Below are positions 9,124-63,145 of a DNA stretch of 64,000 nt, one piece after another. The position numbers and the translations under genes are program-made. The stretch lies in the IMG/VR virus record IMGVR_UViG_3300043425_001539, positions 124,001-188,000 of that record. The stretch is one strand, 5' to 3'. Each line of letters begins with the position of its first letter. Within the stretch, counting starts at the first letter, position 1. The notes beneath the pieces were generated by a model. It was not told the origin of the DNA, ran no database searches, and was given only the letters and a program-made list of their open reading frames with translations.

Positions 9124-9525
9124 ATGTATAAAGTTAAAACCTATGAAGAGTATTTTCCTAAATGGGTTAGCGATTCAACTGAGGATAGGAAAAAAGCTCA
9201 AATGAAAAAGCAAGCAAAAATGGACGATGACGATCCTTCTGCATATAAAAAAATGCCAGGCGACACAAAAGGAAAAGATAAATTAAAAAAATCTAAACAT
9301 ACAGTTAAATACCATGAATTGTATGGGAAGAATAATGAAGAAAAAGAAGGTGGTATGTATTTATCCGCATTGAATAATATTGTTACGCACTCAAGTGAAA
9401 TAATCAATCTTATAGATGAAAATATGGAATTGCCTGCATGGGTTCAGGACAAAATAACATTATCTGAACATAACATGGATGCTGTGTTAAATTTTTTAAA
9501 AACTACTATGAATGATGAAATATAA
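9124..9525 (+). CDS. Hypothetical T4-like internal head protein
   Basis: N-terminal MYKVKTYEEY tag; DDDPSAYKKMPGD..KSKHT and LPAWVQDKIT motifs recalled from T4-like phage proteins. Confidence 0.5.
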   Translation: MYKVKTYEEYFPKWVSDSTEDRKKAQMKKQAKMDDDDPSAYKKMPGDTKGKDKLKKSKHTVKYHELYGKNNEEKEGGMYLSALNNIVTHSSEIINLIDENMELPAWVQDKITLSEHNMDAVLNFLKTTMNDEI

Positions 9526-10582
9526 AGATTATTTACTTAAAAACTTTAATGATCATACGGTTTTAAATTACCCACAAACTCCTGAAGAATTTAAAAAGAT
9601 AGTAATGTTTTCAACAATGAGTCAAGAACAGGAGCAAAATCCTACAATTGTTGAAAAAATTAAAAAGGTTTTTTTATATCAAGATGATGCTGATGATTAT
9701 GCTTGTTCTTTAATGGAAAAAGAAATGCCCCTTTTACTTTGGGGTAAAAAAACTTTAATAGAAGAAAGCCAAATTCTTGCAATGACAAAATTTGATCCTT
9801 TTCCAAAAGGAATTTATAATAATCCAAAAAGTATAATTACAAGTAAAAAAGATTTAACTCAAATATATCAAAAAGAAAATTACAAGTTTTTGCCCAAAAC
9901 GTATTTTAATAAAAAAGATGCATTAGAAAATTTGGATTTTCCTATTATAGGTAAATCTTTAAACTCTTTTCAATCAAGAGGAGTTATAAAAATAAATAAT
10001 AAAAAGGAGCTTTCAGAATTATCAAATGAATACGATATTTTTCAACAGCAAATTAAAATTTCAAATGAATATCGTTTTATTTTTTTTAATGGATTTAACA
10101 CAGAAATAACATTATTATGCGGCTTTCATCGTAAACCTACCAACAAAAAGGCAAAAGATTTACGTGAGGCTATGAGTTTTACTTCTATGAAAGAAAAACA
10201 ACCTTCAGAATTTAAGTGGACGCAAGTTGATATAAATAAATTTGCAGATAAAGATCTTTTTGAAATTGCATCAGCTGTATTTAAACATAGCCCAGGATTA
10301 AACATAGTAGGAATTGACGTTGCTTATGAAAAAAATAACTCTAAACCTTATTACATAGAGCAAAATATAACACCTAGTATGATAGCTAATGTACCTTTTT
10401 TGGTATATAAATTTATTTATGAAGATGCATTTTATCCTTTAAGTAAATATACAATACAAAGATTGGAACAACTATCGTTAGGATATATTATCAAAAGACT
10501 TAAAGAAGACGATCTATTTGATGTAGAATCTCAATATGCTGGAATAAATTTAAAAGGAATTTCATATTCCGAAATAATGTAA
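9512..10582 (+). CDS. ATP-grasp ligase (RimK-like)
   Basis: FLPKTYF, FPIIGKS..SRGVIKI, FQQQI..EYRF, IVGIDV and YYIEQNITPS motifs. Confidence 0.7.
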   Translation: MMKYKDYLLKNFNDHTVLNYPQTPEEFKKIVMFSTMSQEQEQNPTIVEKIKKVFLYQDDADDYACSLMEKEMPLLLWGKKTLIEESQILAMTKFDPFPKGIYNNPKSIITSKKDLTQIYQKENYKFLPKTYFNKKDALENLDFPIIGKSLNSFQSRGVIKINNKKELSELSNEYDIFQQQIKISNEYRFIFFNGFNTEITLLCGFHRKPTNKKAKDLREAMSFTSMKEKQPSEFKWTQVDINKFADKDLFEIASAVFKHSPGLNIVGIDVAYEKNNSKPYYIEQNITPSMIANVPFLVYKFIYEDAFYPLSKYTIQRLEQLSLGYIIKRLKEDDLFDVESQYAGINLKGISYSEIM

Positions 10583-10583
10583 T

Positions 10584-11636
10584 ATGTTATTAAAATACGA
10601 TAGTTTTATAAAAAGACCGTTTAAAATAGGATTTTTCGGTGACATGGGATGTGAAACCATGCAGGTAGATACTATTATTGATTCAGATCCATTAATGTAT
10701 ATCAAAAAGTGGATGAATTCTTTAGATTTTAAAGTAGGCCAACTTGAAACAACTTTCAGTGGATATGAATCAGATTATCCTAAATTTTCATCCTCTGATG
10801 TCTTTGCAGAATACTTAAAAAACAATTTTGATTTATTATTAACAGCAAATAACCACAGTTTAGACGGAGGAATTAAAGGTGCTGTGCGCACATCTAAAAT
10901 ATTAGATGATTTAAAATTACCACATATAGGAACAGGGTTTATAGAAAAACCCAGAACTTTATATGACACAAATATAAACGGTTATACCGTAACATTTTTA
11001 AATTACGTAACATCAATCAATGGAGAAAAAAGCAAAAAGGAAGGCAAAATTTTCACGGACATTAATTCCGAAGAAATCCCATCAGGAGTCGTCAATTTTT
11101 ACGATGAAGCCGAAATTAAAGAAAAGATTAATATTGCGAAAAAGAGAAGTGATATCATCATTCCTACAATCCATCAAAGAAATTCAAGAAAAATAAGGGA
11201 ATTTGGTGAATACGCAACAGAAAAACAAATTGAAGATCTTGAAGCAATATTGGACATGGGTGCCAACATCGTCGTCGGAGCTCACCCTCATGATTTTCAA
11301 GGCGGCCGACTTTATTCAGAAAATCGCATTATCATTTATTCTTTAGGTAATTTTTATAGTGCAATGACTAATAAAAAATATCCAGTCAATTCAGGATGTG
11401 TTATGGTAATAACGTCAGACTCATATCAAAATTTAAGATATTCATTTTTACCTGTTTGCACATATAAAACAAATAATTTCTATTATGTATTACCAATGGC
11501 GCCTATTGAGGTAGGTGCTTATAAATTTATTAACAAGGATGACAGATATGAAATAACAAAAAAATTACAGGAAATTAGAGGGGTATTAAAAAGATGTGAT
11601 TTATCTGAAGAGGTTATTCAAATTCATCATTTATAA
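10584..11636 (+). CDS. CapA family metallophosphoesterase (poly-gamma-glutamate synthesis protein-like)
   Basis: GDM, QLETT, ANNHSLDGG, HIGTG, VVGAHPH and YSLGNF motifs. Confidence 0.85.
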   Translation: MLLKYDSFIKRPFKIGFFGDMGCETMQVDTIIDSDPLMYIKKWMNSLDFKVGQLETTFSGYESDYPKFSSSDVFAEYLKNNFDLLLTANNHSLDGGIKGAVRTSKILDDLKLPHIGTGFIEKPRTLYDTNINGYTVTFLNYVTSINGEKSKKEGKIFTDINSEEIPSGVVNFYDEAEIKEKINIAKKRSDIIIPTIHQRNSRKIREFGEYATEKQIEDLEAILDMGANIVVGAHPHDFQGGRLYSENRIIIYSLGNFYSAMTNKKYPVNSGCVMVITSDSYQNLRYSFLPVCTYKTNNFYYVLPMAPIEVGAYKFINKDDRYEITKKLQEIRGVLKRCDLSEEVIQIHHL

Positions 11637-14073: not shown

Positions 14074-15111
14074 TTAGCGTTTTTTCCGATAAATACCTAC
14101 AGTAGATTCACGTGAAGTGTACCAACTAGAATAGGAAATTATATTGCCGTAACTCAAAATTTGTGATAGCGGAGCACCAGTTATTTGCAAAATTTGGCAA
14201 TGGGTATTACCGTCTGTAAACACCATAATATCGTCAAACCCAGCATAGTCTTTATAAGTTAGCATTTGAATTGCCAAAAACAGATTAGATAACTCATCAG
14301 GAGTTTTAATACCTTTCATAACCATGTTTGTCATTTCTTCTTTATATGAAGTTAAAGAATCAGGCATTTGTGATAAAGCCAAAACAAACTTAGCTGCTTC
14401 TGCTCTAGTGAATTTTTTATTGGCAACAGCAGGAAAAATATCTTTCTTGATAGTAGTTGAACTAATACCTCTACTTACAATTTCCGAACCTAAAATTTTA
14501 TTTACGTTATCTAAGGCATCAACTCCATTTACCAATCTTCCTATCGGAGAAAGCCTACCGTTTTTTCCTTTCACTTCAACATTTCTTTTGTTAATAGGAT
14601 CATAAAGATCTCCTTTAGTTCCTTTTTGAAATGTGGTAAATACCGAAAACATTAATTCGCCAGGTCCCATATCGCCTGCTAATGCAAAATAAAGTTCCTG
14701 AAAAAATTTATCAGAAAAACCTTTATAATATGAAGCTAATGCTGAATACGGGTCAAATAAATTTCCGTACATGGAAGTAGATGACATAGGCAAAGGATTG
14801 TTTTCCAGCAAATCAATTATTTGTCCTAAATTTTCAGGTCCTCCTGTGTATAATCTTTTTGCAAGATTTTTAACCTTTTCAGCTCCTTCAGCTCTTGCGG
14901 CAGGTGGTAACTTAGCAAAAGCAATATCTTTCAAATGATTAAATGCAGATTCAGCTAAAGTATTCTTAATTGAATTAACTTTTTCGCTAAACTTTGGATC
15001 GTCTGCATCAAGTGTACCAAGAACATCTTTGCCGGGAGTATCTTGGGCATTGATATATACCAAATTATTTTCTACAAGAAAATCTTGATAAGATAAGAAA
15101 TGTGTTTTCAT
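14074..15111 (-). CDS. Putative PD-(D/E)XK nuclease-like protein with internal-protein-type N-terminal tag
   Basis: GPGE...KGDLY...VEVKG motif; N-terminus MKTHFLSYQDFLVE. Confidence 0.5.
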   Translation of the reverse strand: MKTHFLSYQDFLVENNLVYINAQDTPGKDVLGTLDADDPKFSEKVNSIKNTLAESAFNHLKDIAFAKLPPAARAEGAEKVKNLAKRLYTGGPENLGQIIDLLENNPLPMSSTSMYGNLFDPYSALASYYKGFSDKFFQELYFALAGDMGPGELMFSVFTTFQKGTKGDLYDPINKRNVEVKGKNGRLSPIGRLVNGVDALDNVNKILGSEIVSRGISSTTIKKDIFPAVANKKFTRAEAAKFVLALSQMPDSLTSYKEEMTNMVMKGIKTPDELSNLFLAIQMLTYKDYAGFDDIMVFTDGNTHCQILQITGAPLSQILSYGNIISYSSWYTSRESTVGIYRKKR

Positions 15112-15633: not shown

Positions 15634-16248
15634 TTATACTTTTACTCTAAAATAAATGTAATAATCTTTATATAAAGGATTATTTTTGGGAAAATTTCCA
15701 ACATCGATTGCGTTTGGAATAACTTCCTTAATTGCTTTTGTTATAAATTCTTTAGAATGAGTTGTAGGATCGGTTGGATCCTTAATTGGCATTTCTACCG
15801 TAATATATTCCAATCGATTTAATTCTGTTTTTAAAAGTTCAGGTTTGTCATCTCTTTCATTTTTAGTAAAAGCATATTTTTTTATATCATCAGGTAATGC
15901 TTTAAACTCTTTGTGAGCATTTTTTTTAATTATTTCAATAAATTGTTTAATACCATCCAATAAATCATATAAATCTTTCTTTCCTTTAACGGTAACAAAG
16001 GATCCATACGTAGAAGTGTCAAGATCTTTTTCGACAGTTATTTCTTTGCCTACTAATGTTGGGATCAACCTATCTTGCAAATATCCTAAAACTTTTAAAT
16101 TCCCACCGCTATATTTAATTTTTCCTCCATACGAAAGAGCATATCTATCTCTTGATAAACCCCATCCAGGTGCTTCACCAAAATAAGTTTTTCTTAATGA
16201 TGCTTGTGCTTCATTGATAAATTGATCATAATCTTGAACGTAATTCAT
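15634..16248 (-). CDS. Hypothetical tagged protein, paralogue of 56706..57320
   Basis: MNYVQDYDQFINEA tag; shares G..P.W, I.Y.GG and L.G.K.F with the 56706 protein; both are 204 aa. Confidence 0.6.
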   Translation of the reverse strand: MNYVQDYDQFINEAQASLRKTYFGEAPGWGLSRDRYALSYGGKIKYSGGNLKVLGYLQDRLIPTLVGKEITVEKDLDTSTYGSFVTVKGKKDLYDLLDGIKQFIEIIKKNAHKEFKALPDDIKKYAFTKNERDDKPELLKTELNRLEYITVEMPIKDPTDPTTHSKEFITKAIKEVIPNAIDVGNFPKNNPLYKDYYIYFRVKV

Positions 16249-16276: not shown

Positions 16277-16531
16277 TTATCTAGCGCTCTTCATCATGGA
16301 TTCACACTCTTTGGCTAATTCACTTATCATAGCTTCATTTAGATTTGCATATTCGCCCAACCATTTTTCGGCAATCTCCTCTTTATCTTTGCTATTATGA
16401 TATTCTTTCATTTCATTTAATGCAGATTCATAACAATTTTTTAAAGCTTCCCAACACTTTTCTGAAACAGCATTCTTTGTTTTGCTTGTATCTTTTTCCT
16501 TAATAAAATCGTCAAATCTTTTAACTTCCAT
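16277..16531 (-). CDS. Hypothetical tagged protein
   Basis: MEVKRFDDFIKE N-terminus; GATAAATA motif upstream at 16547-16554. Confidence 0.6.
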   Translation of the reverse strand: MEVKRFDDFIKEKDTSKTKNAVSEKCWEALKNCYESALNEMKEYHNSKDKEEIAEKWLGEYANLNEAMISELAKECESMMKSAR

Positions 16532-47482: not shown

Positions 47483-47507
47483 TGTGATTTGATATTTTTT
47501 TTTAAAT

Positions 47508-48720: not shown

Positions 48721-48725
48721 GTGTA

Positions 48726-49112
48726 CTACTTTTGCGAATCGCCAGCCCAAACTCGGTAACTGTCTTCATCAAAGTGTTGTGTTGATACTTCAAAAACAAT
48801 GCCATCTGTAAGAGCTTCAAGTTGATGCGGTTGTCCTGGATATTGTCGAACAGAGTCTCCTTCTCTTAATGTTATTTCATTGACTTTTGCGGTTTGCGTA
48901 TCTATCCAACGATAAATAAATTCGCCTTCTTTAACATACCAAGTTTCATCTTTAAGCATGTGATAATGCATTGAAAATTTTGCGCCTGCTTTAAAACACA
49001 AAAGTTTTCCGCAATAAAATTCATTATTTTCAAATACAATCTCATGTCCCCATCCTTTAGGAACATTGCATTCTTTGCACTCCTTTGCATTGAATATGTT
49101 TGGTTTTTTCAT
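48726..49112 (-). CDS. Cupin (mannose-6-phosphate isomerase-like)
   Basis: KGWGHE, FSMHYHMLKDETWYV, PH.L and EVST..F.EDSYR motifs. Confidence 0.8.
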   Translation of the reverse strand: MKKPNIFNAKECKECNVPKGWGHEIVFENNEFYCGKLLCFKAGAKFSMHYHMLKDETWYVKEGEFIYRWIDTQTAKVNEITLREGDSVRQYPGQPHQLEALTDGIVFEVSTQHFDEDSYRVWAGDSQK

Positions 49113-49141
49113 AAAAATATATTTGATTTATATATTCAGAG

Positions 49142-49212
49142 CAGAAGCATTAGGATTCGAACCTAAAATAACGCTTTTGGAGAGCGCCATGATACCTTTT
49201 CACCATACTCCT
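49142..49212 (-). tRNA. tRNA-Trp(CCA)
   Basis: AGGAGTA/TGCTTCT acceptor, GCGCT-CTCCAAA-AGCGT anticodon arm, TTCGAAT T-loop, G73. Confidence 0.88.
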
Positions 49213-49216
49213 GTAT

Positions 49217-49390
49217 TTATTCACAGTATTTATTTTTTCTGCACTTGTATTTATTCTCTTCTTTCTTTTTATCTTTAAATACTTTAGGGGCAAACCTTCC
49301 ATCATAGAATCCTTGTTCCTGGGCATTTTTTCTTTGTTTACCCATTTCAATTTTCCTAAGTTGTTCTGAAGTTATCACAAATTTTTTCAT
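49217..49390 (-). CDS. Small basic protein, candidate ArfA-like ribosome rescue factor (57 aa, not in ORF track)
   Basis: MKKFVITSEQLRKIEMGKQRKNAQEQGFYDGRFAPKVFKDKKKEENKYKCRKNKYCE. It exactly fills the gap between tRNA-Gln and tRNA-Trp and has an AT-rich start context. The ArfA likeness is inference. Confidence 0.55.
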   Translation of the reverse strand: MKKFVITSEQLRKIEMGKQRKNAQEQGFYDGRFAPKVFKDKKKEENKYKCRKNKYCE

Positions 49391-49412
49391 ATTAAAATTT
49401 TTAAATTGTGAG

Positions 49413-49483
49413 TTATCTGATCTGGGCTCGAACCAGAAATTTAGGACTCAAAAACCTACGTGATACCATTTCACTATCAGACA
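49413..49483 (-). tRNA. tRNA-Gln(TTG)
   Basis: TGTCTGA/TCAGATA acceptor (U1-A72), TAGGT-TTTTGAG-TCCTA anticodon arm, TTCGAGC T-loop. Confidence 0.85.
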
Positions 49484-49488
49484 ATATG

Positions 49489-49562
49489 TAGGCCTGGCAG
49501 GGTACGATCCTGCAACCCCTGAATTAAAAGTTCAGTGCTCTATCCATTTGAGCTACAAGCCT
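49489..49562 (-). tRNA. tRNA-Lys(TTT)
   Basis: AGGCTTG/CAGGCCT acceptor, CTGAA-CTTTTAA-TTCAG anticodon arm; atypical ATCGTAC T-loop. Confidence 0.88.
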
Positions 49563-49569
49563 ATATTTG

Positions 49570-49641
49570 AGCCTTCTGTCGGACTCGAACCAACATCTTC
49601 TAAATTACAAATTTAAAGCTTTACCATTAAGCTAAGAAGGC
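49570..49641 (-). tRNA. tRNA-Thr(TGT)
   Basis: GCCTTCT/AGAAGGC acceptor, TTAAA-TTTGTAA-TTTAG anticodon arm, TTCGAGT T-loop. Confidence 0.88.
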
Positions 49642-49649
49642 AATTTGTG

Positions 49650-49725
49650 TCCGAGAAGAAGGGTTCGAACCTTCATGATGTCTGGTTCCCAAAACCAGAG
49701 GCTTAGCCAATTAGCCCATTCTCGG
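49650..49725 (-). tRNA. tRNA-Pro(TGG)
   Basis: CCGAGAA/TTCTCGG acceptor, CTGGT-TTTGGGA-ACCAG anticodon arm, TTCGAAC T-loop. Confidence 0.88.
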
Positions 49726-49735
49726 AAATTTGATT

Positions 49736-49777
49736 AAAAACAAAAAGGTCCAGATAATTTAATTACCTGGACCTTTT
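49736..49777 (-). terminator. Intrinsic terminator inside the tRNA operon (attenuator terminator)
   Basis: RNA AAAAGGUCCAGGUAAU-UAA-AUUAUCUGGACCUUUU followed by UGUUUUU. Confidence 0.85.
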
Positions 49778-49799
49778 AAGAATAATAATTACTATTATA

Positions 49800-49919
49800 C
49801 TAAGGTCCAGTATCTGGCCACGTAGACGGTTGTTGAACACAACCAATAACACCAACCGGTGTAGCAACTGTTTTGCTTGTTGCTTTTGAAATTTTAGCTG
49901 ATGTGATTTGTTGTTTCAT
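49800..49919 (-). CDS. Putative attenuator leader peptide (39 aa, not in ORF track)
   Basis: MKQQITSAKISKATSKTVATPVGVIGCVQQPSTWPDTGP*. Its last codons contain CUGGACCUU, complementary to the 5' arm of the downstream terminator. Confidence 0.7.
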   Translation of the reverse strand: MKQQITSAKISKATSKTVATPVGVIGCVQQPSTWPDTGP

Positions 49920-49938
49920 ATTTTTAATTTTAATTTAG

Positions 49939-50010
49939 TGGCGGGGCCGGGAATCGAACCCGAACCTCCAGGTTATGAGCCTGGCGAACTACCGTTATTA
50001 CCACCCCGCA
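49939..50010 (-). tRNA. tRNA-Met(CAT), initiator-like
   Basis: TGCGGGG/CCCCGCC acceptor with a 1:72 mismatch, CCAGG-CTCATAA-CCTGG anticodon arm, TTCGATT T-loop; weak D-stem. Confidence 0.8.
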
Positions 50011-50542: not shown

Positions 50543-51091
50543 TTACCACAATCCATCAGAACTTTTAATATCCTTGACTTTAGACAAATCCCAATCAAAA
50601 TCTGAATGAACTTTAGATTTACTAAATATGCCTTTCATATATCTGACATTTCTAATATCCCAATTTCTTAGATTACCATCAAAAGGAGTATCATAAAACA
50701 TAGATGCCATGTTGGTTACTTTACTAACATTCCACCCGCTAACGTCACCCTTAAAAGGTGTCCCTTCAAACATACCTTCCATGTTGGTTACATTGCTAAC
50801 GTCCCATTCGCTAATGTCACCTTTAAAATCTGACCCATAAAACATGTAGGACATATTTTTTACATTACTAACATTCCATTCGCTAATGTTGCCATTAAAA
50901 GGCATTTCTGCAAATAAGAATGACATGTCTTTAATTCGCGAAACATCAACATGACTTAAATCTGCATTAGGCCCAAATTTAGCTATTTCATTTTCAATTA
51001 TCGACTCTAAAGATTTCCGATCTATTGCATAAATAACTTTGTTTTGAGCAGCTTCGTTAAGAAACTGATCGAAAGATTTTAAATTTTTCAT
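50543..51091 (-). CDS. BspA-type / DUF285 leucine-rich repeat protein with N-terminal tag
   Basis: 24-aa repeats FNGxISxWNVSNVxNMxxMF; N-terminus MKNLKSFDQFLNEA. Confidence 0.85.
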   Translation of the reverse strand: MKNLKSFDQFLNEAAQNKVIYAIDRKSLESIIENEIAKFGPNADLSHVDVSRIKDMSFLFAEMPFNGNISEWNVSNVKNMSYMFYGSDFKGDISEWDVSNVTNMEGMFEGTPFKGDVSGWNVSKVTNMASMFYDTPFDGNLRNWDIRNVRYMKGIFSKSKVHSDFDWDLSKVKDIKSSDGLW

Positions 51092-51095: not shown

Positions 51096-51872
51096 TTAAA
51101 TTTTTATATGTTTCAGACCATACATTCTATCTACATTATCAGCCTTTGATAAATTCCATTGACTAATATCGCCTTTAAACTTAGAGTCTAAGAACATTAT
51201 AAATACATCTCTGACATTGCTAACGTCCCATTTGCTAATGTCGCCGTTAAATCGAGATTCTGCAAACATGTGCGTCATATCTCTAACTTTGCTAACATTC
51301 CACTTGCTGATGTCACCGTTAAAAGTTGTCTTTTGAAACATGTGCGACATATCAATAACTTTGCTGACATCCCACTTGCTGATGTCGCCATTAAATTTAG
51401 ACCCTTCAAACAATGATGACATCATTTCAACATTACTTACATCCCATTGACTAATGTCGCCGTTAAATTTAGAATATGCAAACATATCAGACATATCACG
51501 TACATTGCTTACATCCCACTTGCTAACATCGCCGTTAAACGAAGAATGACGAAACATTCCCCACACAGTGCGAGCATTACTAACATTCCACTTGCTAACA
51601 TCGCCGTTAAATTTTGAGAATGCAAATGTATCATTAAAATTAGTAACATTGCTTACATCCCACTTGCTAACGTCGCCGTTAAATTTTGTACCTGAAAAAG
51701 CGGCGCTTATATCGGTTAGACCTGAAACATCAATGTGATTTAAGTCAGCATTTGGTCCTAGCAATTGAATTTCTTTTAAAATAATTGGTTTTAATTCTTT
51801 TGCGTTCTTTGGGACAATAATTTCGCGTTCTGCTTCATTAAGAAACTGATCAAATGTTTTTAAATTTTTCAT
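51096..51872 (-). CDS. BspA-type / DUF285 LRR protein with N-terminal tag
   Basis: Tandem 24-aa FNGDVSKWDVSNV repeats; N-terminus MKNLKTFDQFLNEA. Confidence 0.85.
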   Translation of the reverse strand: MKNLKTFDQFLNEAEREIIVPKNAKELKPIILKEIQLLGPNADLNHIDVSGLTDISAAFSGTKFNGDVSKWDVSNVTNFNDTFAFSKFNGDVSKWNVSNARTVWGMFRHSSFNGDVSKWDVSNVRDMSDMFAYSKFNGDISQWDVSNVEMMSSLFEGSKFNGDISKWDVSKVIDMSHMFQKTTFNGDISKWNVSKVRDMTHMFAESRFNGDISKWDVSNVRDVFIMFLDSKFKGDISQWNLSKADNVDRMYGLKHIKI

Positions 51873-51897: not shown

Positions 51898-52737
51898 TTA
51901 GTTAAACAAATCTTCTTTAGACGTTACGTCTCGCAGATTTGTCAAATTCCACATATGAACACTTCTTTTAAATTTAGATCCTTGGAAGATACTTTCAATG
52001 TATTGCACTTGTCTTACGTCCCACTTACTAATGTCTTGATTAAATGATGAGCCATTAAACATAAAACTCATATTTTCTACATTGCTAACGTTCCATTTGC
52101 CGATGTTTTGATTAAATCGAGAGTCAGCAAACATCCATTGCATATCGGTAACATTTAATACATTCCAATTGCCGATGTCTTGATTAAATTTCGATAACCT
52201 AAACATATATGACATATCAGTTACTCGTCTTACGTTCCACTTGCTGATGTCACCGTTAAATTGTGATTCCGTAAACATTCCACGCATCAGCTCTACATTA
52301 CTCACGTTCCAACCACTGATATCTCCTTTAAATTTGGAATCTTTGAACATATTAGACATATCAATGACATTACCAACATCCCATTTGCTGATATCTTTAT
52401 TGAACTCTGATCCTTCAAACATACCTGACATATCTTTTACTTTGCCAACATTCCACTTGCTGATGTCACTATTAAAATGAGAATACAAAAACATATTTTT
52501 CATAGAAGTAACATTGCTAACATCCCACTTGCTGATATTGCCTTTAAATTGTGACCCTTCAAACAAGGATACCATGTTGGTAACTTGCGAAACGTCAATA
52601 TGATTCAGATCTGCTTTAGGTCCAAGTCTAGCAATTTCGCTTTCTACTATATCCTTTAAAGTTTGTCGATCTTTAGCAATAATAGTTTCTTGTGTAGCTT
52701 CATTAAGAAAATGTTCAAAAGTTTTTAAATTTTTCAT
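51898..52737 (-). CDS. BspA-type / DUF285 LRR protein with N-terminal tag
   Basis: Tandem 24-aa repeats; N-terminus MKNLKTFEHFLNEA. Confidence 0.85.
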   Translation of the reverse strand: MKNLKTFEHFLNEATQETIIAKDRQTLKDIVESEIARLGPKADLNHIDVSQVTNMVSLFEGSQFKGNISKWDVSNVTSMKNMFLYSHFNSDISKWNVGKVKDMSGMFEGSEFNKDISKWDVGNVIDMSNMFKDSKFKGDISGWNVSNVELMRGMFTESQFNGDISKWNVRRVTDMSYMFRLSKFNQDIGNWNVLNVTDMQWMFADSRFNQNIGKWNVSNVENMSFMFNGSSFNQDISKWDVRQVQYIESIFQGSKFKRSVHMWNLTNLRDVTSKEDLFN

Positions 52738-52770: not shown

Positions 52771-53442
52771 TTATTTTTTTGCATATGAAGAGATTTTCCA
52801 ATTTGAAGTATCCCCCTTGAAAGCTGAGTTATTAAACATGTCGGTCATATCCTCAACCTTACTAACATTCCACTTGCTGATATCTTGATTAAATTCTGAA
52901 GATTGAAACATTCCAGCCATATCATAAACATTACCTACATTCCATTTGCTGATGTCTTTGTTAAATCTTGAGTCTTGAAACATCCAAGACATATCAGTAA
53001 CATTACTAACATTCCACTTGCTGATATCTTGATTAAATTCTGAATAAGCAAACATACCAGTCATAACTTTTACGTTGCTTACATTCCACCTGCTGATATC
53101 TTGATTAAATTCTGATGATGCAAACATATAGGCCATTAATCGAACATTCCGAACATTCCATCCTGAAATGTTACCATTAAAGACTGACTCCTGAAACATA
53201 TAGGACATGTTTTCAACTTGACTAACATCCCATTTACTTATGTTGCCGTTAAAATCTGAATTTTTAAACAACCCCGACATATCTTTAACTTTTGATACAT
53301 CAATATGATTTAAATCCGCCGTAGAACCTTGTGTTTTGATTGCATCTTCAATTAGCTTTATTAAATCTGCTTTATCTTTAGCAATAATTGTTGTGCCTGC
53401 TGCTTCATTAAGAAACTGCTCAAAGGTTTTAAAATTTTTCAT
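52771..53442 (-). CDS. BspA-type / DUF285 LRR protein with N-terminal tag
   Basis: Tandem 24-aa repeats; N-terminus MKNFKTFEQFLNEA. Confidence 0.85.
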   Translation of the reverse strand: MKNFKTFEQFLNEAAGTTIIAKDKADLIKLIEDAIKTQGSTADLNHIDVSKVKDMSGLFKNSDFNGNISKWDVSQVENMSYMFQESVFNGNISGWNVRNVRLMAYMFASSEFNQDISRWNVSNVKVMTGMFAYSEFNQDISKWNVSNVTDMSWMFQDSRFNKDISKWNVGNVYDMAGMFQSSEFNQDISKWNVSKVEDMTDMFNNSAFKGDTSNWKISSYAKK

Positions 53443-56271: not shown

Positions 56272-56321
56272 ATTTAACTCCTTATTAAGGATATTTGGTA
56301 TTTTAGGGGTAGGCGTGTTTT

Positions 56322-56693
56322 TTAGTCTTGAGTAAAATCTTCAATCTTGTCATTGAAAGAAGATTGTTGATATGAAGATAAATTCTTAATTTCATCGCGT
56401 TTTCTTGGAGTTAACTCAATTACAGTGTACCCCATTCGGTAATACTTCTTTTCTGCTGCTGTCAAATTTTTATTACGGCGTTTTGCAACTTCTTTTAAAG
56501 CTTCTTTGTCATTACCTGTTTCCATAACATCGCCCCAAGTTCCTTTAACAAAAATTGGGTATGTTCTTTTAGTGCCAATTGAACCTCCGTAATAAACCAA
56601 AGCAAATTGGTCAGATAAATTTACTTCATTACCTTCGTTGAGAAATTCTTCCGATTCGTTGATAAAATTATCAAAGTTTTGAATATGTTTCAT
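56322..56693 (-). CDS. Hypothetical tagged protein
   Basis: N-terminus MKHIQNFDNFINESEEFLNE. Confidence 0.65.
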   Translation of the reverse strand: MKHIQNFDNFINESEEFLNEGNEVNLSDQFALVYYGGSIGTKRTYPIFVKGTWGDVMETGNDKEALKEVAKRRNKNLTAAEKKYYRMGYTVIELTPRKRDEIKNLSSYQQSSFNDKIEDFTQD

Positions 56694-56705
56694 ATTTGTG
56701 TTTTT

Positions 56706-57320
56706 TTATCCTACAATTGAAAAACTTAATTGATTTTCAGAAACTACCAAATTATAAACTTTATTAAATAGAGTCTCAACCTCACGTTTAATATCTGATT
56801 CAAGCTGTGCCCTACTTTTTTGTGCAAAGTATTGTTTTAGAGATGCTTGTTTAAAAATATTTGCAGTACTCCGGTAATTGCGTGCGCTTCCTACAAATGA
56901 AACATTGACAGTTCTAGTTTTTGCCGAAGGTATATTACTGATTTGCATGTCTTTTCCCAACTTAGATTTCACCAAATCATTGTTTGCATTTTGCATCACT
57001 GCATCAACAAATAGTTTCAATCCAGCTAAAAAATCGCCCATTTCGTTTGCATTAAAATACGGTCCGCTACCTTGAGAAACAATTGTGTATTTATCTCCCC
57101 AACCGCTTTCTGCTATGTCACTTGTTACTGCATCATACCTACCTGTGCTTATTTTGCTTGGAACGGCCATAACAGGTACTTTGCCTCCAGCATATTGGAT
57201 GGTAGCAGAATACCTTAAATCGCCGTATTCACCTACTCTCCATTGTGGCTTTCCTCCTGTCAAAGAAGCCTCGTTAAGATTTTCATTGATAAAATTATCA
57301 AAATTTTGAATGTGTTTCAT
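56706..57320 (-). CDS. Hypothetical tagged protein, paralogue of 15634..16248
   Basis: N-terminus MKHIQNFDNFINENLNEA. Confidence 0.65.
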   Translation of the reverse strand: MKHIQNFDNFINENLNEASLTGGKPQWRVGEYGDLRYSATIQYAGGKVPVMAVPSKISTGRYDAVTSDIAESGWGDKYTIVSQGSGPYFNANEMGDFLAGLKLFVDAVMQNANNDLVKSKLGKDMQISNIPSAKTRTVNVSFVGSARNYRSTANIFKQASLKQYFAQKSRAQLESDIKREVETLFNKVYNLVVSENQLSFSIVG

Positions 57321-57334
57321 ACTTGTGTTTTTTT

Positions 57335-57949
57335 TTAATTATAAATTTTTGATTTATCAACAACTGTTGAAATTTGCCAATCCGATATATCTCCATTAAA
57401 CTTTGAGTTCTTAAATATACCATTCATAGTCAAAACTCTTCCAACATCCCACTTGCTAACATCGCCATTAAACTTTGAATCCGCAAACAGCAATCTCATA
57501 TCTTCAACATTTTTAGTATTCCATTTACTAACATCGCCATTAAACTCAGATCCTTCAAACATACTCTGCATATTTGCAACATTGCTTACATCCCATTTGC
57601 TAATGTCGCCATTAAACTTGGATCCTTCAAACATGCTTTTCATATTAGCAACATTGCCTACATTCCACTTGCTAATGTCACCATTAAATTTCGAGAATGC
57701 AAACATGCCTTTCATATTGGCTACCTTTCCCACATTCCACTTGCTAATGTCACCATTAAAAGGTGAGTACATAAACAAGTCAGACATATCAGTTATTTTG
57801 GATACATCTATGTGATTCAAATCAGCATTTGGTCCTTGCTCTGCTATTTCGGTTTTAACCAATTTTAAAAGCTCGGTTCGATTTGCAGGAACAACAGTTT
57901 CTTGTGTTGCTTCATTTATAAACTGTTCAAATGTTTTAACTGTTTTCAT
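57335..57949 (-). CDS. BspA-type / DUF285 LRR protein with N-terminal tag (fifth paralogue)
   Basis: FNGDISKWNV 24-aa repeats; N-terminus MKTVKTFEQFINEA. Confidence 0.85.
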   Translation of the reverse strand: MKTVKTFEQFINEATQETVVPANRTELLKLVKTEIAEQGPNADLNHIDVSKITDMSDLFMYSPFNGDISKWNVGKVANMKGMFAFSKFNGDISKWNVGNVANMKSMFEGSKFNGDISKWDVSNVANMQSMFEGSEFNGDVSKWNTKNVEDMRLLFADSKFNGDVSKWDVGRVLTMNGIFKNSKFNGDISDWQISTVVDKSKIYN

Positions 57950-57952
57950 TGG

Positions 57953-58315
57953 TTATTTATATTTTAAATTTGAAATTTCGTCAATTAAACCTCCTAAGTT
58001 ATAGTCGCTTTGTCTTGAACCGCTAAAAAAATGATCTTGAATTTTTTTATTAGTCGCGGAAGAATATATGTTTTTGTCCCAATCAATTCGGTCTATTGTC
58101 ATATAATATCCCACATCTTCACCGCTGCTAAATCCTTTTGCTGTATATTTTTTATTTGAATTAGGCCTATCATCTGTGATAGCATAAGTTACTTTCAAGT
58201 CAAGATTAAGTGGAACAGAAATACCATCAATTGTGTAATTATCCAATTTAATATTTATGGTATTTAATTCTTCACTTTCATTTAAAAAAGTTTCAAACGT
58301 TTTAATTTTTTTCAT
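57953..58315 (-). CDS. Hypothetical tagged protein
   Basis: N-terminus MKKIKTFETFLNES. Confidence 0.65.
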   Translation of the reverse strand: MKKIKTFETFLNESEELNTINIKLDNYTIDGISVPLNLDLKVTYAITDDRPNSNKKYTAKGFSSGEDVGYYMTIDRIDWDKNIYSSATNKKIQDHFFSGSRQSDYNLGGLIDEISNLKYK

Positions 58316-60819: not shown

Positions 60820-61302
60820 TTATCTTGTTAATGATGTATTTGTTAAATTTAATTCTCCTTTCATACCCACGTCGCGAGATTTCCAGTAATCTTTACCGTA
60901 TGATATGAATATTTCTTCTCCTGCTTTAATAATTCTTGAAGCTCTGAAAACAATTCTTTCCTTGTTTTCATCGTAATGCCATCTAGCGTTAGGCTGGTTT
61001 CTGTGATTATATAATGATCCGTTTCCTAGTGCTAGTGCATACTTGTTATCTTCAAGTTTAAACGCATAATCAATTAGTGAAGTATTAACAATTTCTTCTT
61101 TGGCAACAATTAAAACTGGGCATTCTTCAATTACTTCATTATCGGTAATTGGTTCAATAGCCCAAATACCTAATCCATCTACTTGTGAATTACCAACGGC
61201 TACTTTATCCCATTTTTTTACGGTTGGTGTTTTTCTTAAAAGTCCACCTCCATGTACAAAAATATCAGACTCTAATATTTCTTCAAAAGATTTAAAATCC
61301 AT
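60820..61302 (-). CDS. SET-domain protein-lysine methyltransferase
   Basis: GLGIWA, SLYNHRNQPNA and IKAGEEIFISYG..YW; likely start MDFKSFEEILES. Confidence 0.85.
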   Translation of the reverse strand: MDFKSFEEILESDIFVHGGGLLRKTPTVKKWDKVAVGNSQVDGLGIWAIEPITDNEVIEECPVLIVAKEEIVNTSLIDYAFKLEDNKYALALGNGSLYNHRNQPNARWHYDENKERIVFRASRIIKAGEEIFISYGKDYWKSRDVGMKGELNLTNTSLTR

Positions 61303-61312
61303 TTTATCTGAT

Positions 61313-63145
61313 TTATTTTTTAAATGCCATATATTCCTCAAATTTCATAAATCTTTTTGGAACATTTTTATTTTCCTTTTTAATATCATCTTCATCATCT
61401 TTCTTTTCTTCCTCAGGCGCTTTTTCGTCATCTTTCTTTTCCTCCTCAGGTTTCTTTTCCTCAGGCGCTTTTTCGTCATCTTTCTTTTCCTCCTCGGGTT
61501 TCTTTTTATCTTCTTTATCTTCCTCGGGTTTTTTAACATCTGAAGTTTTTTCCTCAGGCTCTTTTTCTTCGCCACCTAAATCTTTCAATTCTTGTATTGC
61601 ATTTGTGATAGCTTCAGTGTCTTTTTCAGGCTCCAATTTAGGAAATTCTTTAAATGCTTTTGCTTCGTCGGGCATTTCTTCATCCTCGCTTTCTATTCCT
61701 TTGTTAACCAATTCAACCATACGGTTGCGCAAATTAATTTGGTTTATCTTTGCTTGTTTAATTTTTTGTAAATCAGTGATTCCTTCGGTTGCAATTTTCT
61801 TTTTATCTTCGCCATCATAAGAATTAATACTTTTAAGTATAACACTTTTGATAGTACCTAAAGGGTCTTTTGATTCAGTTTCTTCGATAATTAAATTAAT
61901 TGCCTCACTTAATTTAAAATTAATCATTCTGAATGAAGCAAAAGAAATTGATTCACTCATATTTTTTAATTCTTCTTTATAACCGTCAACCGTTTGTTTT
62001 GCTTTTTCTAAAGCATCACTAATTAATTTAGCTTTTTCTTCGTCGCCTGCTTCTTCAGCAGATTTTAACTCTTCTTCAGCTTTTTTAATTTTTTCTTCAG
62101 CTGACTCAATTCTATCTTTAAGTTCTTTGGTTTTTGAATCTTCAGTTTTTTCATCAGAAGATTTGTCAGATGTTTTATTTTGCTTGTCTTGAATAGCTTT
62201 TTCTATATCGACCCACTTTTTGTAAACTTCATTTGCTTTATTTGTGTACTCTGTGTATGCATCTTGCCATTGAGTAATTCCATACTTATTTAGAGATTCA
62301 ATTTGTTTATTTGCTTTTTCAAATTGTTCATCAACATTTTCATCAACATTTTCATCATCTTTAACATCAGACAGCTTATTTTTTAATTCTTCAGATGTTT
62401 TTTTATCTCCCGTATCAGTTGCTATTTGAATTGCTTCTTCAAGAACCTCAATGTCAGCATTTCTTTTTGCTTCAGCAAATTCAAGATCCCATTTTTTCTT
62501 AAATGAACTTCCCAATATGTTGGATTGAAGTTCAATAAATTTTTCTTGTTTTTTTTCTATTTTTTCTTTTTCGGTTGTGTAATTATTTTCTGCCTTTTTC
62601 CACGCAACCTCTTTCATGTTTTCAGCTTTTTCCAATTCCTTTTTAGCATTTTCGGTATTACCTTTTGCCGCTGCTAATTTTTGATCTCGCTGTTTTCTTA
62701 ACTGCTCTTGTTTTGCTGAGTTCCCTTCAGCTCGTTTAATCATTTCACGGTACTCGTCTTCAATTTGTGTTACAGCTGATTTATCTTCATCATCAGACGA
62801 TGATTTGGTTTTTGCTTTAAGCGGCTCAATAACTTCAGTTTTATATTTATGATCAAATACATATTTTGATCTATCAGCGCTGGAATTTTTATAAGCTTCA
62901 ATATATGGTTTTAATGAACTTTTTAATGACGTATAAATTGTTCTATTATACACAGACTTTGCAGCCAATAAAGCAATGGATAACGTTCCTGCTGCTACTA
63001 CATTTGCAACCGATTCCAATTCATTTCCTCCACCCCACGAAAATGGACCAATATCTAATCGAGTTGCCTCATCACCTGAAAATTCATAAAGATGTTCATT
63101 GCTTTCAACAACAGTCTTTCTTTCAAGATAATCTTTAAACTTCAT
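61313..63145 (-). CDS. Acidic coiled-coil protein, probable prohead core/internal protein
   Basis: E/K-rich coiled coil right after the capsid gene; MKFKDYLE N-terminus; GATATATA at 63171-63178. Confidence 0.55.
   Translation of the reverse strand: MKFKDYLERKTVVESNEHLYEFSGDEATRLDIGPFSWGGGNELESVANVVAAGTLSIALLAAKSVYNRTIYTSLKSSLKPYIEAYKNSSADRSKYVFDHKYKTEVIEPLKAKTKSSSDDEDKSAVTQIEDEYREMIKRAEGNSAKQEQLRKQRDQKLAAAKGNTENAKKELEKAENMKEVAWKKAENNYTTEKEKIEKKQEKFIELQSNILGSSFKKKWDLEFAEAKRNADIEVLEEAIQIATDTGDKKTSEELKNKLSDVKDDENVDENVDEQFEKANKQIESLNKYGITQWQDAYTEYTNKANEVYKKWVDIEKAIQDKQNKTSDKSSDEKTEDSKTKELKDRIESAEEKIKKAEEELKSAEEAGDEEKAKLISDALEKAKQTVDGYKEELKNMSESISFASFRMINFKLSEAINLIIEETESKDPLGTIKSVILKSINSYDGEDKKKIATEGITDLQKIKQAKINQINLRNRMVELVNKGIESEDEEMPDEAKAFKEFPKLEPEKDTEAITNAIQELKDLGGEEKEPEEKTSDVKKPEEDKEDKKKPEEEKKDDEKAPEEKKPEEEKKDDEKAPEEEKKDDEDDIKKENKNVPKRFMKFEEYMAFKK
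61409..61495. repeat. 48-bp-period coding tandem repeat (KKPEEEKKDDEKAPEE)
   Basis: ttcctcaggcgctttttcgtcatctttcttttcctcctc occurs at 61409 and 61457. Confidence 0.85.

What the first reader, a model, noticed from the sequence alone, without database searches (positions are those of the whole stretch)
9124..63145. A T4 capsid-targeting-like N-terminal tag on ~16 unrelated proteins: an injected payload arsenal
Seen: the consensus M-K-x(1-4)-[TSN]-[FY]-[ED]-x-[FY]-[LI]-N-E, or close variants, starts the genes at 9124, 9512, 10584, 15111, 16248, 16531, 51091, 51872, 52737, 53442, 56693, 57320, 57949, 58315, 61302 and 63145. Two neighbours share an identical MKHIQNFDNFINE on otherwise unrelated bodies. 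Known: T4 internal proteins carry a ~10-aa capsid-targeting sequence (IPIII MKTYQEFIAE) that the prohead protease cleaves after Glu. Inference: a modular, shuffled packaging tag delivers LRR proteins, a nuclease-like protein, a SET methyltransferase, an ATP-grasp ligase and CapA into the capsid and then into the host.
Basis: partly seen in the sequence, partly recalled or inferred. Interest (0 to 1): 0.75.

Follow-up and report, generated by a model that had tools for sequence, protein, structure and literature searches.

The report
Capsid-address tag on jumbo-phage proteins
A freshwater jumbo phage puts the same 13-residue N-terminal label, built like phage T4's capsid-targeting sequence and ending in its own head protease's probable cut site, on about 30 unrelated proteins, and hundreds of uncultivated relatives do the same, so the label probably marks what these phages load into their heads.

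Summary
The consensus is M-K-x-[IV]-K-x-F-[ED]-x-F-[LI]-N-E, usually with Glu at residue 13. It starts 11 of the 16 listed genes; all 11 are on the minus strand. The SET gene has a decayed version. The genes at 9124, 9512 (ATP-grasp-like), 10584 (CapA-like) and 63145 do not carry it.

Genome-wide (238 kb) 30 genes carry it, on 24 body types with no BLASTP similarity to each other. Shuffled proteomes give 1-4 hits against 39 observed.

The phage has T4-type head genes. These include an S77 (gp21-family) prohead protease fused to a scaffold-like region with about nine 14-residue repeats of Y-x-E-Y-[LIV]-A-E, which has the same architecture as the tag. The capsid protein's conserved 43-residue N-terminus ends in an invariant L-N-E. 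A conserved [IV]-N-E also closes the protease domain.

The tag's aromatic, aromatic, aliphatic and Glu positions match the T4 CTS positions shown experimentally to drive targeting and cleavage.

The tag occurs in at least 120 IMG/VR stretches, and in published 462-kb and 636-kb huge phages, alongside the same protease fusion. Orthologues gain, lose or decay it as a module.

Best reading: a cleavable capsid-targeting propeptide. Packaging, cleavage and injection are inferred, not shown. I found no published description.

The parts
14074..15111 (-). Tagged gene, 345 aa. N-terminus MKTHFLSYQDFLVE|N. The body is possibly PD-(D/E)xK nuclease-like.
   Evidence: PSSM 20.9. No Pfam or PHROG hit. Of 11 homologues, 4 keep the tag, 2 have a decayed one and 5 lack exactly that segment. 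The motif D168...E179-V-K181 is invariant. The AF2 model has pLDDT 87. Foldseek found nothing. VIA-align gave a weak hit to HhaI endonuclease, Z 3.8.
15634..16248 (-). Tagged gene, 204 aa. N-terminus MNYVQDYDQFINE|A. Body unknown.
   Evidence: PSSM 29.4. No Pfam or PHROG hit. Weak BLASTP similarity to the body of 56706-57320 (E 8e-5).
16277..16531 (-). Tagged gene, 84 aa. N-terminus MEVKRFDDFIKE|K (Glu at residue 12).
   Evidence: PSSM 24.6. No family hit.
50543..51091 (-). Tagged DUF285 (BspA-type leucine-rich repeat) protein, 182 aa. N-terminus MKNLKSFDQFLNE|A.
   Evidence: Pfam PF03382, E 4e-49. PSSM 34.2.
51096..51872 (-). Tagged DUF285 protein, 258 aa. N-terminus MKNLKTFDQFLNE|A.
   Evidence: PF03382, E 5e-71. 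PSSM 36.0.
51898..52737 (-). Tagged DUF285 protein, 279 aa. N-terminus MKNLKTFEHFLNE|A.
   Evidence: PF03382, E 4e-108. PSSM 34.7.
52771..53442 (-). Tagged DUF285 protein, 223 aa. N-terminus MKNFKTFEQFLNE|A.
   Evidence: PF03382, E 1e-67. PSSM 36.2.
56322..56693 (-). Tagged gene, 123 aa. N-terminus MKHIQNFDNFINE|S. Body unknown.
   Evidence: PSSM 35.7. No family hit. An RNA library holds exact contigs over it; this is weak evidence because DNA carry-over is possible.
56706..57320 (-). Tagged gene, 204 aa. Its tag peptide, MKHIQNFDNFINE|N, is identical to its neighbour's. Body unknown.
   Evidence: PSSM 34.2. The tag codons differ from the neighbour's at 3 synonymous sites. No informative Atlas match.
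57335..57949 (-). Tagged DUF285 protein, 204 aa. N-terminus MKTVKTFEQFINE|A.
   Evidence: PF03382, E 5e-54. PSSM 36.0.
57953..58315 (-). Tagged gene, 120 aa. N-terminus MKKIKTFETFLNE|S. Body unknown.
   Evidence: PSSM 31.5. No family hit.
60820..61302 (-). SET-domain protein, 160 aa from the ATG at 61302. It carries a decayed tag, MDFKSFEEILE|S.
   Evidence: PF00856, E 2e-15. About 17 phage orthologues begin M-[DN]-F-K-x-F-E but mostly lack F-[LI]-N-E. More distant SET homologues have no N-terminal extension.
9512..10582 (+). ATP-grasp-like protein, 356 aa. NOT tagged here (MMKYKDYLLKNFND...).
   Evidence: Weak ATP-grasp Pfam hits below the cut-offs. PSSM negative. Its homologue in relative G010 starts ...MLFEQFLNE|S.
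9124..9525 (+). Not tagged (MYKVKTYEEYFPKW: no aliphatic-x-Glu).
10584..11636 (+). Not tagged.
   Evidence: PF09587, E 4e-39. N-terminus MLLKYDSFIKRPF.
61313..63145 (-). 610-aa Lys/Glu-rich, probably coiled-coil protein directly downstream of the capsid gene. Not tagged. Possibly a scaffold or decoration protein.
   Evidence: No Pfam or PHROG hit. Sequence shown.
63328..64000 (-). 3' part of the gp23-type major capsid gene. The gene runs on to window-equivalent 65199. Its N-terminal 43 residues end in the invariant ...YHSLNE|G.
   Evidence: PF07068, E 1e-34. N-terminal conservation across about 27 related loci.

Best explanation
The shared N-terminus is a cleavable capsid-targeting propeptide, the functional counterpart of the T4 capsid-targeting sequence (CTS).

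The tag is about 13 residues long. It has an aromatic residue at P7 and P4, Leu/Ile at P3, Asn at P2 and Glu at P1. It is made at the extreme N-terminus of soluble cargo proteins.

Inferred steps:
1. During head assembly the tag associates with the prohead core. That core is built here by a protein that fuses the gp21-family protease to a scaffold-like region, which itself consists of tandem copies of a tag-like motif (Y-x-E-Y-[LIV]-A-E every 14 residues). The tag probably behaves as one extra 'scaffold repeat' and co-assembles with the array.
2. After the shell closes, the protease cuts after Glu in [LIV]-x-E. This trims the capsid protein's 43-residue propeptide (...LNE|), separates its own domains ([IV]-N-E| after the protease domain), chops the repeat array, and removes the tag from each cargo.
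3. The cargo stays in the head with the DNA. By analogy with T4 IPs and Alt, at least part of it is ejected into the host.

What is shown here: the motif, its position, its statistics, its modularity, its co-occurrence with the protease fusion, and the matching junction motifs. Targeting, cleavage and ejection are inferred.
For: 1. Positional and statistical specificity of the tag. Glu is at residue 13 in 234 of 259 tags collected from IMG/VR loci.

2. The bodies are unrelated. Genome-wide there are 24 BLASTP clusters. Distinct Pfam domains include DUF285, cytidylyltransferase-like, 2H phosphoesterase/Acb1-like and an AAA_16/HTH protein (the last below cut-off). A LicD protein has a lower-scoring tag. 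PAP2 and Hint-domain proteins carry shorter variants that fall outside the count of 30.

3. T4-type head module. The S77 protease domain has E 2e-13 and is 42% identical to cyanophage gp21. The capsid protein is gp23-type.

4. Match to the T4 CTS. The real CTS, MKTYQEFIAE|A, fits the same core [FYW]..[FYW][LIV].E. Published mutagenesis assigns targeting to CTS residues 4 and 7 (the two aromatics) and processing to residues 8 and 10 (Ile, Glu) (PMC9026906).

5. Distribution of the core motif. In this genome it occurs 51 times: 27 at N-termini, 9 in the protease's C-terminal repeat array and 15 elsewhere in 74 kaa. Relatives carry up to 16 YSEYLAE repeats.

6. Junction motifs. The capsid protein N-terminus is conserved for 43 residues, ends in an invariant L-N-E and then diverges. 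Glu165 is invariant in [IV]-[NY]-E|S at the end of the protease domain, and SLNE|S near the C-terminus is nearly invariant.

7. Clade-wide spread and co-occurrence.
- At least 120 IMG/VR stretches match the exact pattern, and many hold several tagged ORFs.
- 21 of 25 large tag-bearing contigs encode an S77 protease in a 500-820-aa open frame.
- Whole relatives have 24 tags (G010) and about 5 tags (G029).
- Huge phages LR756500 and LR756504 have 10 and 7 tags.
- Lak-A1, PAU and pT24, which lack the repeat array, have none above control.

8. Modularity between orthologues.

9. Selection acts on the peptide, not the DNA: the tag codons vary synonymously.

10. No tagged body has a TM-like segment, against 31 of 269 untagged proteins.

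11. Prokaryote genomes (596 Gb) give only 75 isolated single matches.
Against: - There is no protein-level evidence: no virion proteome, no mapped N-termini and no cultured host.
- The similarity to the T4 CTS is at the level of a 7-residue pattern, too short to prove homology.
- The complex prediction of protease-scaffold plus a tagged protein gave no answer (score 0.10).
- Thirty different cargo species, about 10% of genes, is far more than T4's handful. Some bodies (LicD, PAP2, cytidylyltransferase-like) are not obvious injected effectors.
- Several tags lack the Glu or the second half (SET, 70262, 71093, 72220, 61914), so cleavage cannot be universal.
- The tag/repeat co-occurrence is phylogenetically non-independent.
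- Three of the 'tag-negative' relatives are 15-33% complete fragments.
- The promoter evidence is only an A-rich leader enrichment.
Confidence: 0.7

Rival explanations
1. The tag is only a protease-removable pro-sequence. It keeps the enzymes inactive or marks them for timed processing, and has no role in capsid targeting. The proteins act in the infected cell and are not packaged.
For: The [LI]-N-E end matches the putative protease sites in the capsid protein and the protease. Many bodies are ordinary enzymes.
Against: In T4, the studied member of this protease family acts on proteins assembled in the prohead core (PMC5694885). A 13-residue peptide is unlikely to mask 24 different folds. The conserved aromatic P7/P4 positions are the T4 targeting positions, not the processing ones. 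Decayed tags that keep only the F-K-x-F-E half (SET orthologues) would be pointless for a pure cleavage signal.
Confidence: 0.1
2. The tag is an address or assembly label for some other destination. Examples are a phage-made compartment, the membrane-proximal assembly site, a chaperone or another virion part such as the tail or baseplate.
For: Only sequence-level inference links it to the head. Tagged genes cluster away from the head module. The complex prediction was uninformative.
Against: The same motif is repeated about 9-16 times in the protease-linked scaffold region and closes the capsid protein propeptide. The tag co-occurs with that protease fusion. There is no hydrophobic or signal-peptide character.
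Confidence: 0.1
3. The conservation is at the nucleic-acid level. It would be a translation-initiation or leader cassette, or a recombination handle copied with the promoter, and the peptide itself has no function.
For: A-rich leaders (TAAAAAAA) are enriched upstream of tagged genes, 10/30 against 17/268. Tagged genes lie in arrays where cassette exchange is plausible.
Against: Tag codons vary freely at synonymous sites while the peptide is kept, within and between genomes that share only 94 of 320 proteins. The conserved features are physico-chemical: aromatic, aliphatic and Glu at fixed spacing.
Confidence: 0.03
4. Paralogy or chance: one expanded gene family with a conserved N-terminus, or an AT-rich-genome artefact.
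For: Five window genes are DUF285 paralogues. The genome is 32% GC.
Against: There are 24 unrelated body clusters with different Pfam domains. Shuffles give 1-4 hits against 39 observed. The reversed-pattern controls gave 0 in the tag-bearing whole genomes and 0-2 per record with the looser pattern. Orthologues exist with and without the tag.
Confidence: 0.02

Closest known systems
Capsid-targeting sequence (CTS) of phage T4 internal proteins IPI/IPII/IPIII and Alt (Mullaney & Black 1996; reviewed in PMC9026906, PMC3012670)
   Same: - It is a short propeptide at the extreme N-terminus.
- It has an aromatic-x-x-aromatic-aliphatic-x-Glu core; T4 reads YQEFIAE.
- It ends in the gp21-type [LI]-x-E site.
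- It is shared by otherwise unrelated proteins and lies in variable gene arrays.
- The phage encodes a gp21-family protease.
   Different: - It is 13 rather than 10 residues long, with Asn fixed at P2 and an acidic residue at P6.
- About 30 carriers per genome, against a handful in T4.
- The carriers include LRR proteins and metabolic-type enzymes rather than small basic proteins.
- The protease is fused to a scaffold-like array of tag-like repeats, whereas in T4 gp21 and gp22 are separate.
- It is found in uncultivated jumbo and huge phages (130-636 kb) whose capsid protein is only distantly gp23-like.
- Nothing has been shown experimentally.
Propeptides of head/ejection proteins of phiKZ-like giant phages (phiKZ gp175, SPN3US gp245 substrates; PMC5694885)
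   Same: The protease is gp21-related and cuts after Glu. Many internal head proteins are processed. Paralogues share identical N-termini. The protease auto-cleaves its C-terminus.
   Different: Their cleavage motif is A/S/G-x-E, and their propeptides are mostly over 100 residues. Here P3 is Leu/Ile/Val as in T4, and the tag is 13 residues.
T4 scaffolding core proteins gp22/gp67/gp68
   Same: They are helical core proteins cut into small peptides at repeated [LI]-x-E sites. CTS proteins associate with this core.
   Different: Here the scaffold-like region is part of the protease polypeptide and is a regular 14-residue repeat. No sequence similarity to gp22 was detected.
DUF285 / BspA-type leucine-rich repeat proteins (Pfam PF03382)
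   Same: Five tagged window genes match strongly.
   Different: The family is normally found in cell-surface or secreted bacterial proteins. Here the proteins have no signal peptide and carry the phage tag instead.

Membership tests
T4-type capsid-targeting sequence (CTS) propeptide | A short (10-20 aa) segment at the extreme N-terminus of the precursor. | tested here: met
   The tag starts at Met1. Glu is at residue 12-16 in all 30 G000 tags, and at residue 13 in 234 of 259 collected tags.
T4-type capsid-targeting sequence (CTS) propeptide | It ends in the prohead-protease site, aliphatic-x-Glu. | tested here: met
   P3 is I/L/V in 98% of tags and P1 is Glu in 100% of collected tags, though this was partly imposed by the search pattern. 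Five weaker G000 tags lack the Glu.
T4-type capsid-targeting sequence (CTS) propeptide | The phage encodes a gp21-family (S77) prohead protease and a gp23-type shell. | tested here: met
T4-type capsid-targeting sequence (CTS) propeptide | The same tag sits on otherwise unrelated proteins. | tested here: met
   24 BLASTP-unrelated clusters and several different Pfam domains.
T4-type capsid-targeting sequence (CTS) propeptide | Residues needed for targeting (T4 positions 4 and 7, aromatic) are conserved. | tested here: met
   P7 is F/Y in 98% and P4 is F/Y in 99% of tags. The T4 assignment comes from PMC9026906.
T4-type capsid-targeting sequence (CTS) propeptide | Descent from the T4 CTS (sequence homology). 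| tested here: inconclusive
   Only a 7-residue pattern match to MKTYQEFIAE. This is too short for a statistical test of homology.
T4-type capsid-targeting sequence (CTS) propeptide | The carrier proteins are present in the head, and the tag is removed after Glu. | not testable with these tools
   No virion proteome or isolate exists. No cultured phage in the collection has the protease fusion.
T4-type capsid-targeting sequence (CTS) propeptide | The tag is sufficient to package a foreign protein. | not testable with these tools
   This needs an experiment. The complex prediction gave no answer.
phiKZ/SPN3US-type long head-protein propeptides | Cleavage motif A/S/G-x-E and propeptides mostly over 100 aa. 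| tested here: not met
   P3 is L/I/V and the tag is 13 aa. The motif description is from PMC5694885.
Peptidase S77 (T4 gp21) prohead protease | Match to the family profile above the curated cut-off. | tested here: met
   47 bits against a cut-off of 27. The catalytic residues were not examined individually.
PD-(D/E)xK nuclease (for the 345-aa cargo at 14074-15111) | A D...(D/E)-x-K catalytic motif on the restriction-endonuclease fold. | tested here: inconclusive
   D168/D171...E179-V-K181 is invariant. Foldseek found no match. The best relevant VIA-align hit is HhaI, Z 3.8. The Atlas leads are weak.

The most novel reading that the evidence does not exclude
A large clade of uncultivated jumbo and huge phages (130-636 kb, from freshwater and other environmental samples) uses one 13-residue 'address label' that is a single copy of the scaffold's own repeat unit. 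Cargo would load by co-polymerising with a protease-scaffold fusion and be released by the same protease. On this reading 5 to more than 30 proteins per genome are pre-loaded and delivered with the DNA, so the injected proteome of uncultivated phages could be read from sequence. The pre-loaded set includes a 2H/Acb1-like phosphoesterase that could destroy cyclic-nucleotide immune signals, a nuclease-like protein, LRR proteins and a SET enzyme. Decayed tags that keep only the targeting half would be packaged without cleavage.
Probability: 0.3. Interest if true: 0.85.

Novelty: new variant of a known kind. Interest (0 to 1): 0.7.

Why it matters
If the tag works as in T4, it gives a sequence-only rule for predicting which proteins uncultivated jumbo and huge phages carry in their heads and probably inject. 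That is a class of early-acting host-takeover and counter-defence factors which is otherwise invisible without an isolate.

It also suggests how targeting works: the tag mimics a scaffold repeat. This point is still unresolved for T4 itself.

It extends the CTS principle far outside the T-even group.

It offers a compact, naturally portable packaging signal.

I found no paper containing the tag strings. None of the papers that mention capsid-targeting sequences and that I opened describes this clade.

Tried and rejected
- Complex prediction of the protease-scaffold (with a 25-row alignment) against the 120-aa tagged protein gave a score of 0.10, below the mark. The tool says this is no evidence either way.
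- PHROGs on 10 tagged or neighbouring proteins found no family.
- A single-sequence AF2 model of the 345-aa cargo was poor, with pLDDT 41. The alignment-based model was good, with pLDDT 87. Foldseek against the PDB still found nothing, and VIA-align gave only Z below 5.
- Megablast of 18 kb of the window against cultured-phage records found no match.
- The late-promoter idea (T4 TATAAATA) yielded only an A-rich leader enrichment and a loose ATATAAAA, which is not convincing.
- Host inference from a scan of prokaryote genomes gave 75 scattered single matches in unrelated taxa, which is uninformative.
- Read laying showed the phage in several freshwater and subsurface samples, and exact contigs in one RNA library. 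That cannot prove transcription.
- I considered and rejected a signal peptide or membrane anchor, because no hydrophobic segment is present.
- I rejected a RiPP/graspetide leader for the neighbouring ATP-grasp, because the carriers are folded 80-450-aa proteins.
- I rejected paralogy and chance.

Full report
**1. What the window is.** The window is bases 124,001-188,000 of a 238,475-bp IMG/VR virus record. The record is 32% GC, is estimated 84% complete, and has about 93% of its genes on the minus strand. It comes from freshwater metagenomes and recurs in several independent samples. It has T4-type head genes:
- a gp23-family capsid protein, whose 3' end is window 63328-64000;
- a Pfam S77 (gp21) prohead protease just beyond the window.

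The protease domain is about 42% identical to cyanophage gp21. The capsid protein is closest to those of metagenomic huge phages (LR7565xx) and Lak phages. It is more distantly related to those of Tenacibaculum phage pT24 and Sphingomonas phage PAU.

**2. The observation.** I translated from each of the 16 listed starts.
- Eleven show a clear common N-terminus, M-K-x-[IVL]-[KQ]-x-[FY]-[DE]-x-F-[LI]-x-E: 15111, 16248, 16531, 51091, 51872, 52737, 53442, 56693, 57320, 57949 and 58315. All are on the minus strand.
- The SET gene (61302) has a shortened version, MDFKSFEEILE|S.
- The three plus-strand genes (9124, 9512, 10584) and 63145 do not have it.

The statistics exclude chance:
- The strict core [FYW][DENQ].[FYW][LIV].E occurs 26 times in the proteome, 21 of them in the first 30 residues.
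- A PSSM gives 39 hits of 8 or more, against 1-4 in shuffled proteomes. Nearly all strong hits start at residue 1-4 or at an internal Met that is the likelier start.
- Genome-wide, 30 genes carry the tag. They cluster at 47-52 kb, 62-75 kb, 138-140.5 kb, 174.5-182.3 kb and 192-204 kb.
- After the tag is removed, these genes fall into 24 clusters with no BLASTP similarity to each other.

The five DUF285 proteins are paralogues, so their shared tag alone would prove nothing. The rest do. The two adjacent genes with identical tag peptides have unrelated bodies, and their tags differ at three synonymous sites.

**3. The bodies.** Pfam finds the following:
- DUF285 (BspA-type LRR), five genes;
- a cytidylyltransferase-like domain;
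- a 2H phosphoesterase with an Acb1-like match just below the cut-off;
- LicD;
- AAA_16/HTH (both below cut-off);
- SET, with the decayed tag;
- PAP2 and a Hint/intein-containing protein, both behind shorter tag variants that are not among the 30.

The others have no Pfam or PHROG match.

The 345-aa protein at 14074-15111 has an invariant D...E-V-K motif. Only weak fold leads point to restriction endonucleases. 'Nuclease-like' is therefore a lead, not a finding.

None of the 30 tagged bodies has a TM-like segment, against 31 of 269 untagged proteins.

**4. Anatomy of the head module.**

*Protease ORF.* The protease ORF (G000 189221-191065, 614 aa) has four parts. The S77 domain covers about residues 20-160. 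A linker follows, then about nine tandem 14-residue repeats, each containing Y-x-[EN]-Y-[LIV]-[AG]-E (residues 263-381), and then a conserved C-terminal domain. In 25 aligned relatives, Glu165 is invariant in [IV]-[NY]-E|S immediately after the protease domain. An S-L-N-E|S site near the C-terminus is nearly invariant. The repeats reach 16 copies of YSEYLAE.

*Capsid protein.* Its first 43 residues are conserved across about 27 related loci and end in an invariant Y-H-[SA]-L-N-E. After that the sequences diverge. This is the pattern expected of a propeptide cut after L-N-E, the same three residues that end the tag.

*Motif distribution.* In this genome the core [FYW]..[FYW][LIV].E occurs 51 times: 27 at N-termini, 9 in the repeat array and 15 elsewhere.

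**5. Comparison with T4, using real data.**
- From the T4 record, IPII and IPIII begin MKTYQEFIAE|A and IPI begins MKTFKEF...ITE|A.
- The review PMC9026906 reports that the first 10 residues of IPIII suffice for packaging.
- It also reports that residues 4 and 7 (Tyr, Phe) matter for targeting, residues 8 and 10 (Ile, Glu) matter for processing, and Asp at position 10 blocks cleavage but not targeting.
- Counted back from the Glu, these are P7, P4, P3 and P1. Those are exactly the four positions that are nearly invariant in the tag: F/Y 98%, F/Y 99%, I/L/V 98%, E.
- They are also the conserved positions in the scaffold repeats.
- T4 core proteins and propeptides are cut by gp21 after Glu (PMC5694885).
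- phiKZ-type giants use A/S/G-x-E and long propeptides, so the present tag is T4-like rather than phiKZ-like.

**6. Distribution.**
Many of those loci hold several tagged ORFs, some up to 14.
- *Protease co-occurrence.* Twenty-one of 25 large tag-bearing contigs encode an S77 protease in a 500-820-aa open frame. The four misses are all 26-54% complete.
- *G010.* This complete 256-kb relative has 24 tagged genes, mostly in one array at 193-200 kb. It shares only 94 of 320 proteins with this genome.
- *G029.* This 245-kb relative has about 5 tags, without the acidic P6.
- *G003.* This 482-kb contig has 23 exact matches.
- *Published huge phages.* LR756500 (462 kb) has 10 tags and LR756504 (636 kb) has 7. 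Their proteases carry 2 and 12 repeats.
- *Phages without tags.* Lak-A1, PAU and pT24 have no repeat array (PAU has a separate protease and scaffold) and show no tags above control. Three fragments with a 780-aa, repeat-poor protease show no tags either.
- *Prokaryote genomes.* 596 Gb gave only 75 isolated single matches.

The tag/repeat association is real but phylogenetically non-independent.

**7. Modularity.**
- The 345-aa protein's orthologues come with the tag (4), with a decayed tag (2), or with a clean deletion of exactly that segment (5).
- The tagged cytidylyltransferase-like protein corresponds to the C-terminal part of an untagged 626-aa G010 protein.
- The 2H/Acb1-like protein has a decayed tag here (...FIALFE|K) and a canonical one in G010.
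- About 17 phage SET orthologues keep M-[DN]-F-K-x-F-E but have mostly lost F-[LI]-N-E. More distant SET proteins have no extension.

Tag codons vary synonymously throughout, so the peptide is what selection keeps.

**8. Mechanism.** The best-supported reading is a cleavable capsid-targeting propeptide.

Shown here:
- the motif, its N-terminal position and its statistics;
- its modularity;
- its match to the functional positions of the T4 CTS;
- the same motif in the scaffold-like array, and the same L/I-N-E at the capsid and protease junctions;
- its co-occurrence with the protease fusion.

Inferred:
- the tag binds the assembling core, most simply by acting as one more copy of the scaffold repeat;
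- the protease removes it after Glu;
- the cargo stays in the head and at least part of it is ejected into the host.

My confidence is about 0.7 for targeting plus cleavage, and lower for ejection. Some carriers may be core components rather than effectors. One candidate is the 104-aa tagged protein just upstream of the protease, which has a 130-aa tagged counterpart at the same position in G010.

**9. Rivals.** I considered four:
- a pure pro-sequence without targeting;
- an address to another destination;
- a nucleic-acid-level cassette;
- paralogy or chance.

The last two are contradicted. The first two cannot be excluded without protein data, but they explain the aromatic positions, the scaffold repeats and the half-decayed tags less well.

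**10. Novelty.** The principle, a short CTS shared by diverse internal proteins, has been known for T-even phages since the 1990s (PMC3012670, PMC9026906). Four things are new here:
- the specific 13-residue tag;
- its scale, up to about 10% of genes;
- its presence across a large clade of uncultivated jumbo and huge phages;
- the protease-scaffold fusion built from tag-like repeats.

A full-text search for six tag strings found no paper. The jumbo-phage comparative paper and the Far-T4 paper do not mention it. I rate it a new variant of a known kind, with interest 0.7.

**11. Limits.**
- Gene calls are my own longest-ATG ORFs.
- The IMG/VR tag logo is biased by the search pattern.
- The negative relatives are few and some are fragments.
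- The complex prediction was uninformative.
- No cultured relative with the fusion protease was found, so the decisive experiments need either an isolate or metaproteomics.

Noticed in passing
G000 189221-191065 (- strand; just beyond the window end, locus L139:1221-3065): The prohead protease is fused to a scaffold-like region made of about nine 14-residue repeats (Y-x-E-Y-[LIV]-A-E). Relatives have up to 16 copies. [IV]-N-E is invariant at the end of the protease domain.
   Followed up: yes
window 9124-11636 (+ strand): A three-gene plus-strand island lies in an almost entirely minus-strand genome. It holds a 133-aa ORF, an ATP-grasp-like protein and a PGA_cap (CapA-like) protein, which might be a poly-gamma-glutamate-type module. 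The ATP-grasp homologue in relative G010 carries the tag.
   Followed up: partly
window 47263-50010: A cluster of seven tRNA genes (Gly, Trp, Gln, Lys, Thr, Pro, Met) lies on the minus strand. It follows a TROVE (Ro60-like) domain protein at 45529-47154. Rfam found no Y-RNA-like partner at gathering threshold.
   Followed up: partly
window 19966-45445: A long block holds sugar and glycosyl-transfer genes (GH16, GT2 and others). It also holds a thymidylate-synthase-family gene (27086-27943), the family that includes dCMP hydroxymethylase. This may be DNA or surface hypermodification machinery.
   Followed up: no
window 704-1900: A 398-aa phage protein has S1 RNA-binding domains (E 9e-21). It sits next to baseplate-like genes, including a weak Phage_base_V match at 2243-3025.
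   Followed up: no
window 61313-63145: A 610-aa Lys/Glu-rich, low-complexity protein lies directly downstream of the capsid gene, with no family match. Its C-terminus (...KFEEYMAFKK) faintly recalls the tag. It may be a scaffold or decoration protein.
   Followed up: partly
G000 75249-76988 (locus L138:11249-12988, - strand): A 579-aa protein has a Hint/intein-splicing domain behind a short tag variant (MTFLKYKEFLIQE|S). It is a possible self-cleaving cargo.
   Followed up: no
G000 196819-197370 (locus L139:8819-9370, - strand): A 2H phosphoesterase has an Acb1 (anti-CBASS) Pfam match of 26.5 bits, just under the 27-bit cut-off. It sits behind a decayed tag, and its G010 orthologue has a canonical tag. 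If packaged, it would be a pre-loaded counter-defence enzyme.
   Followed up: partly
window 56307-58079: A freshwater metatranscriptome library holds exact-matching contigs over four tagged genes. DNA carry-over cannot be excluded.
   Followed up: partly
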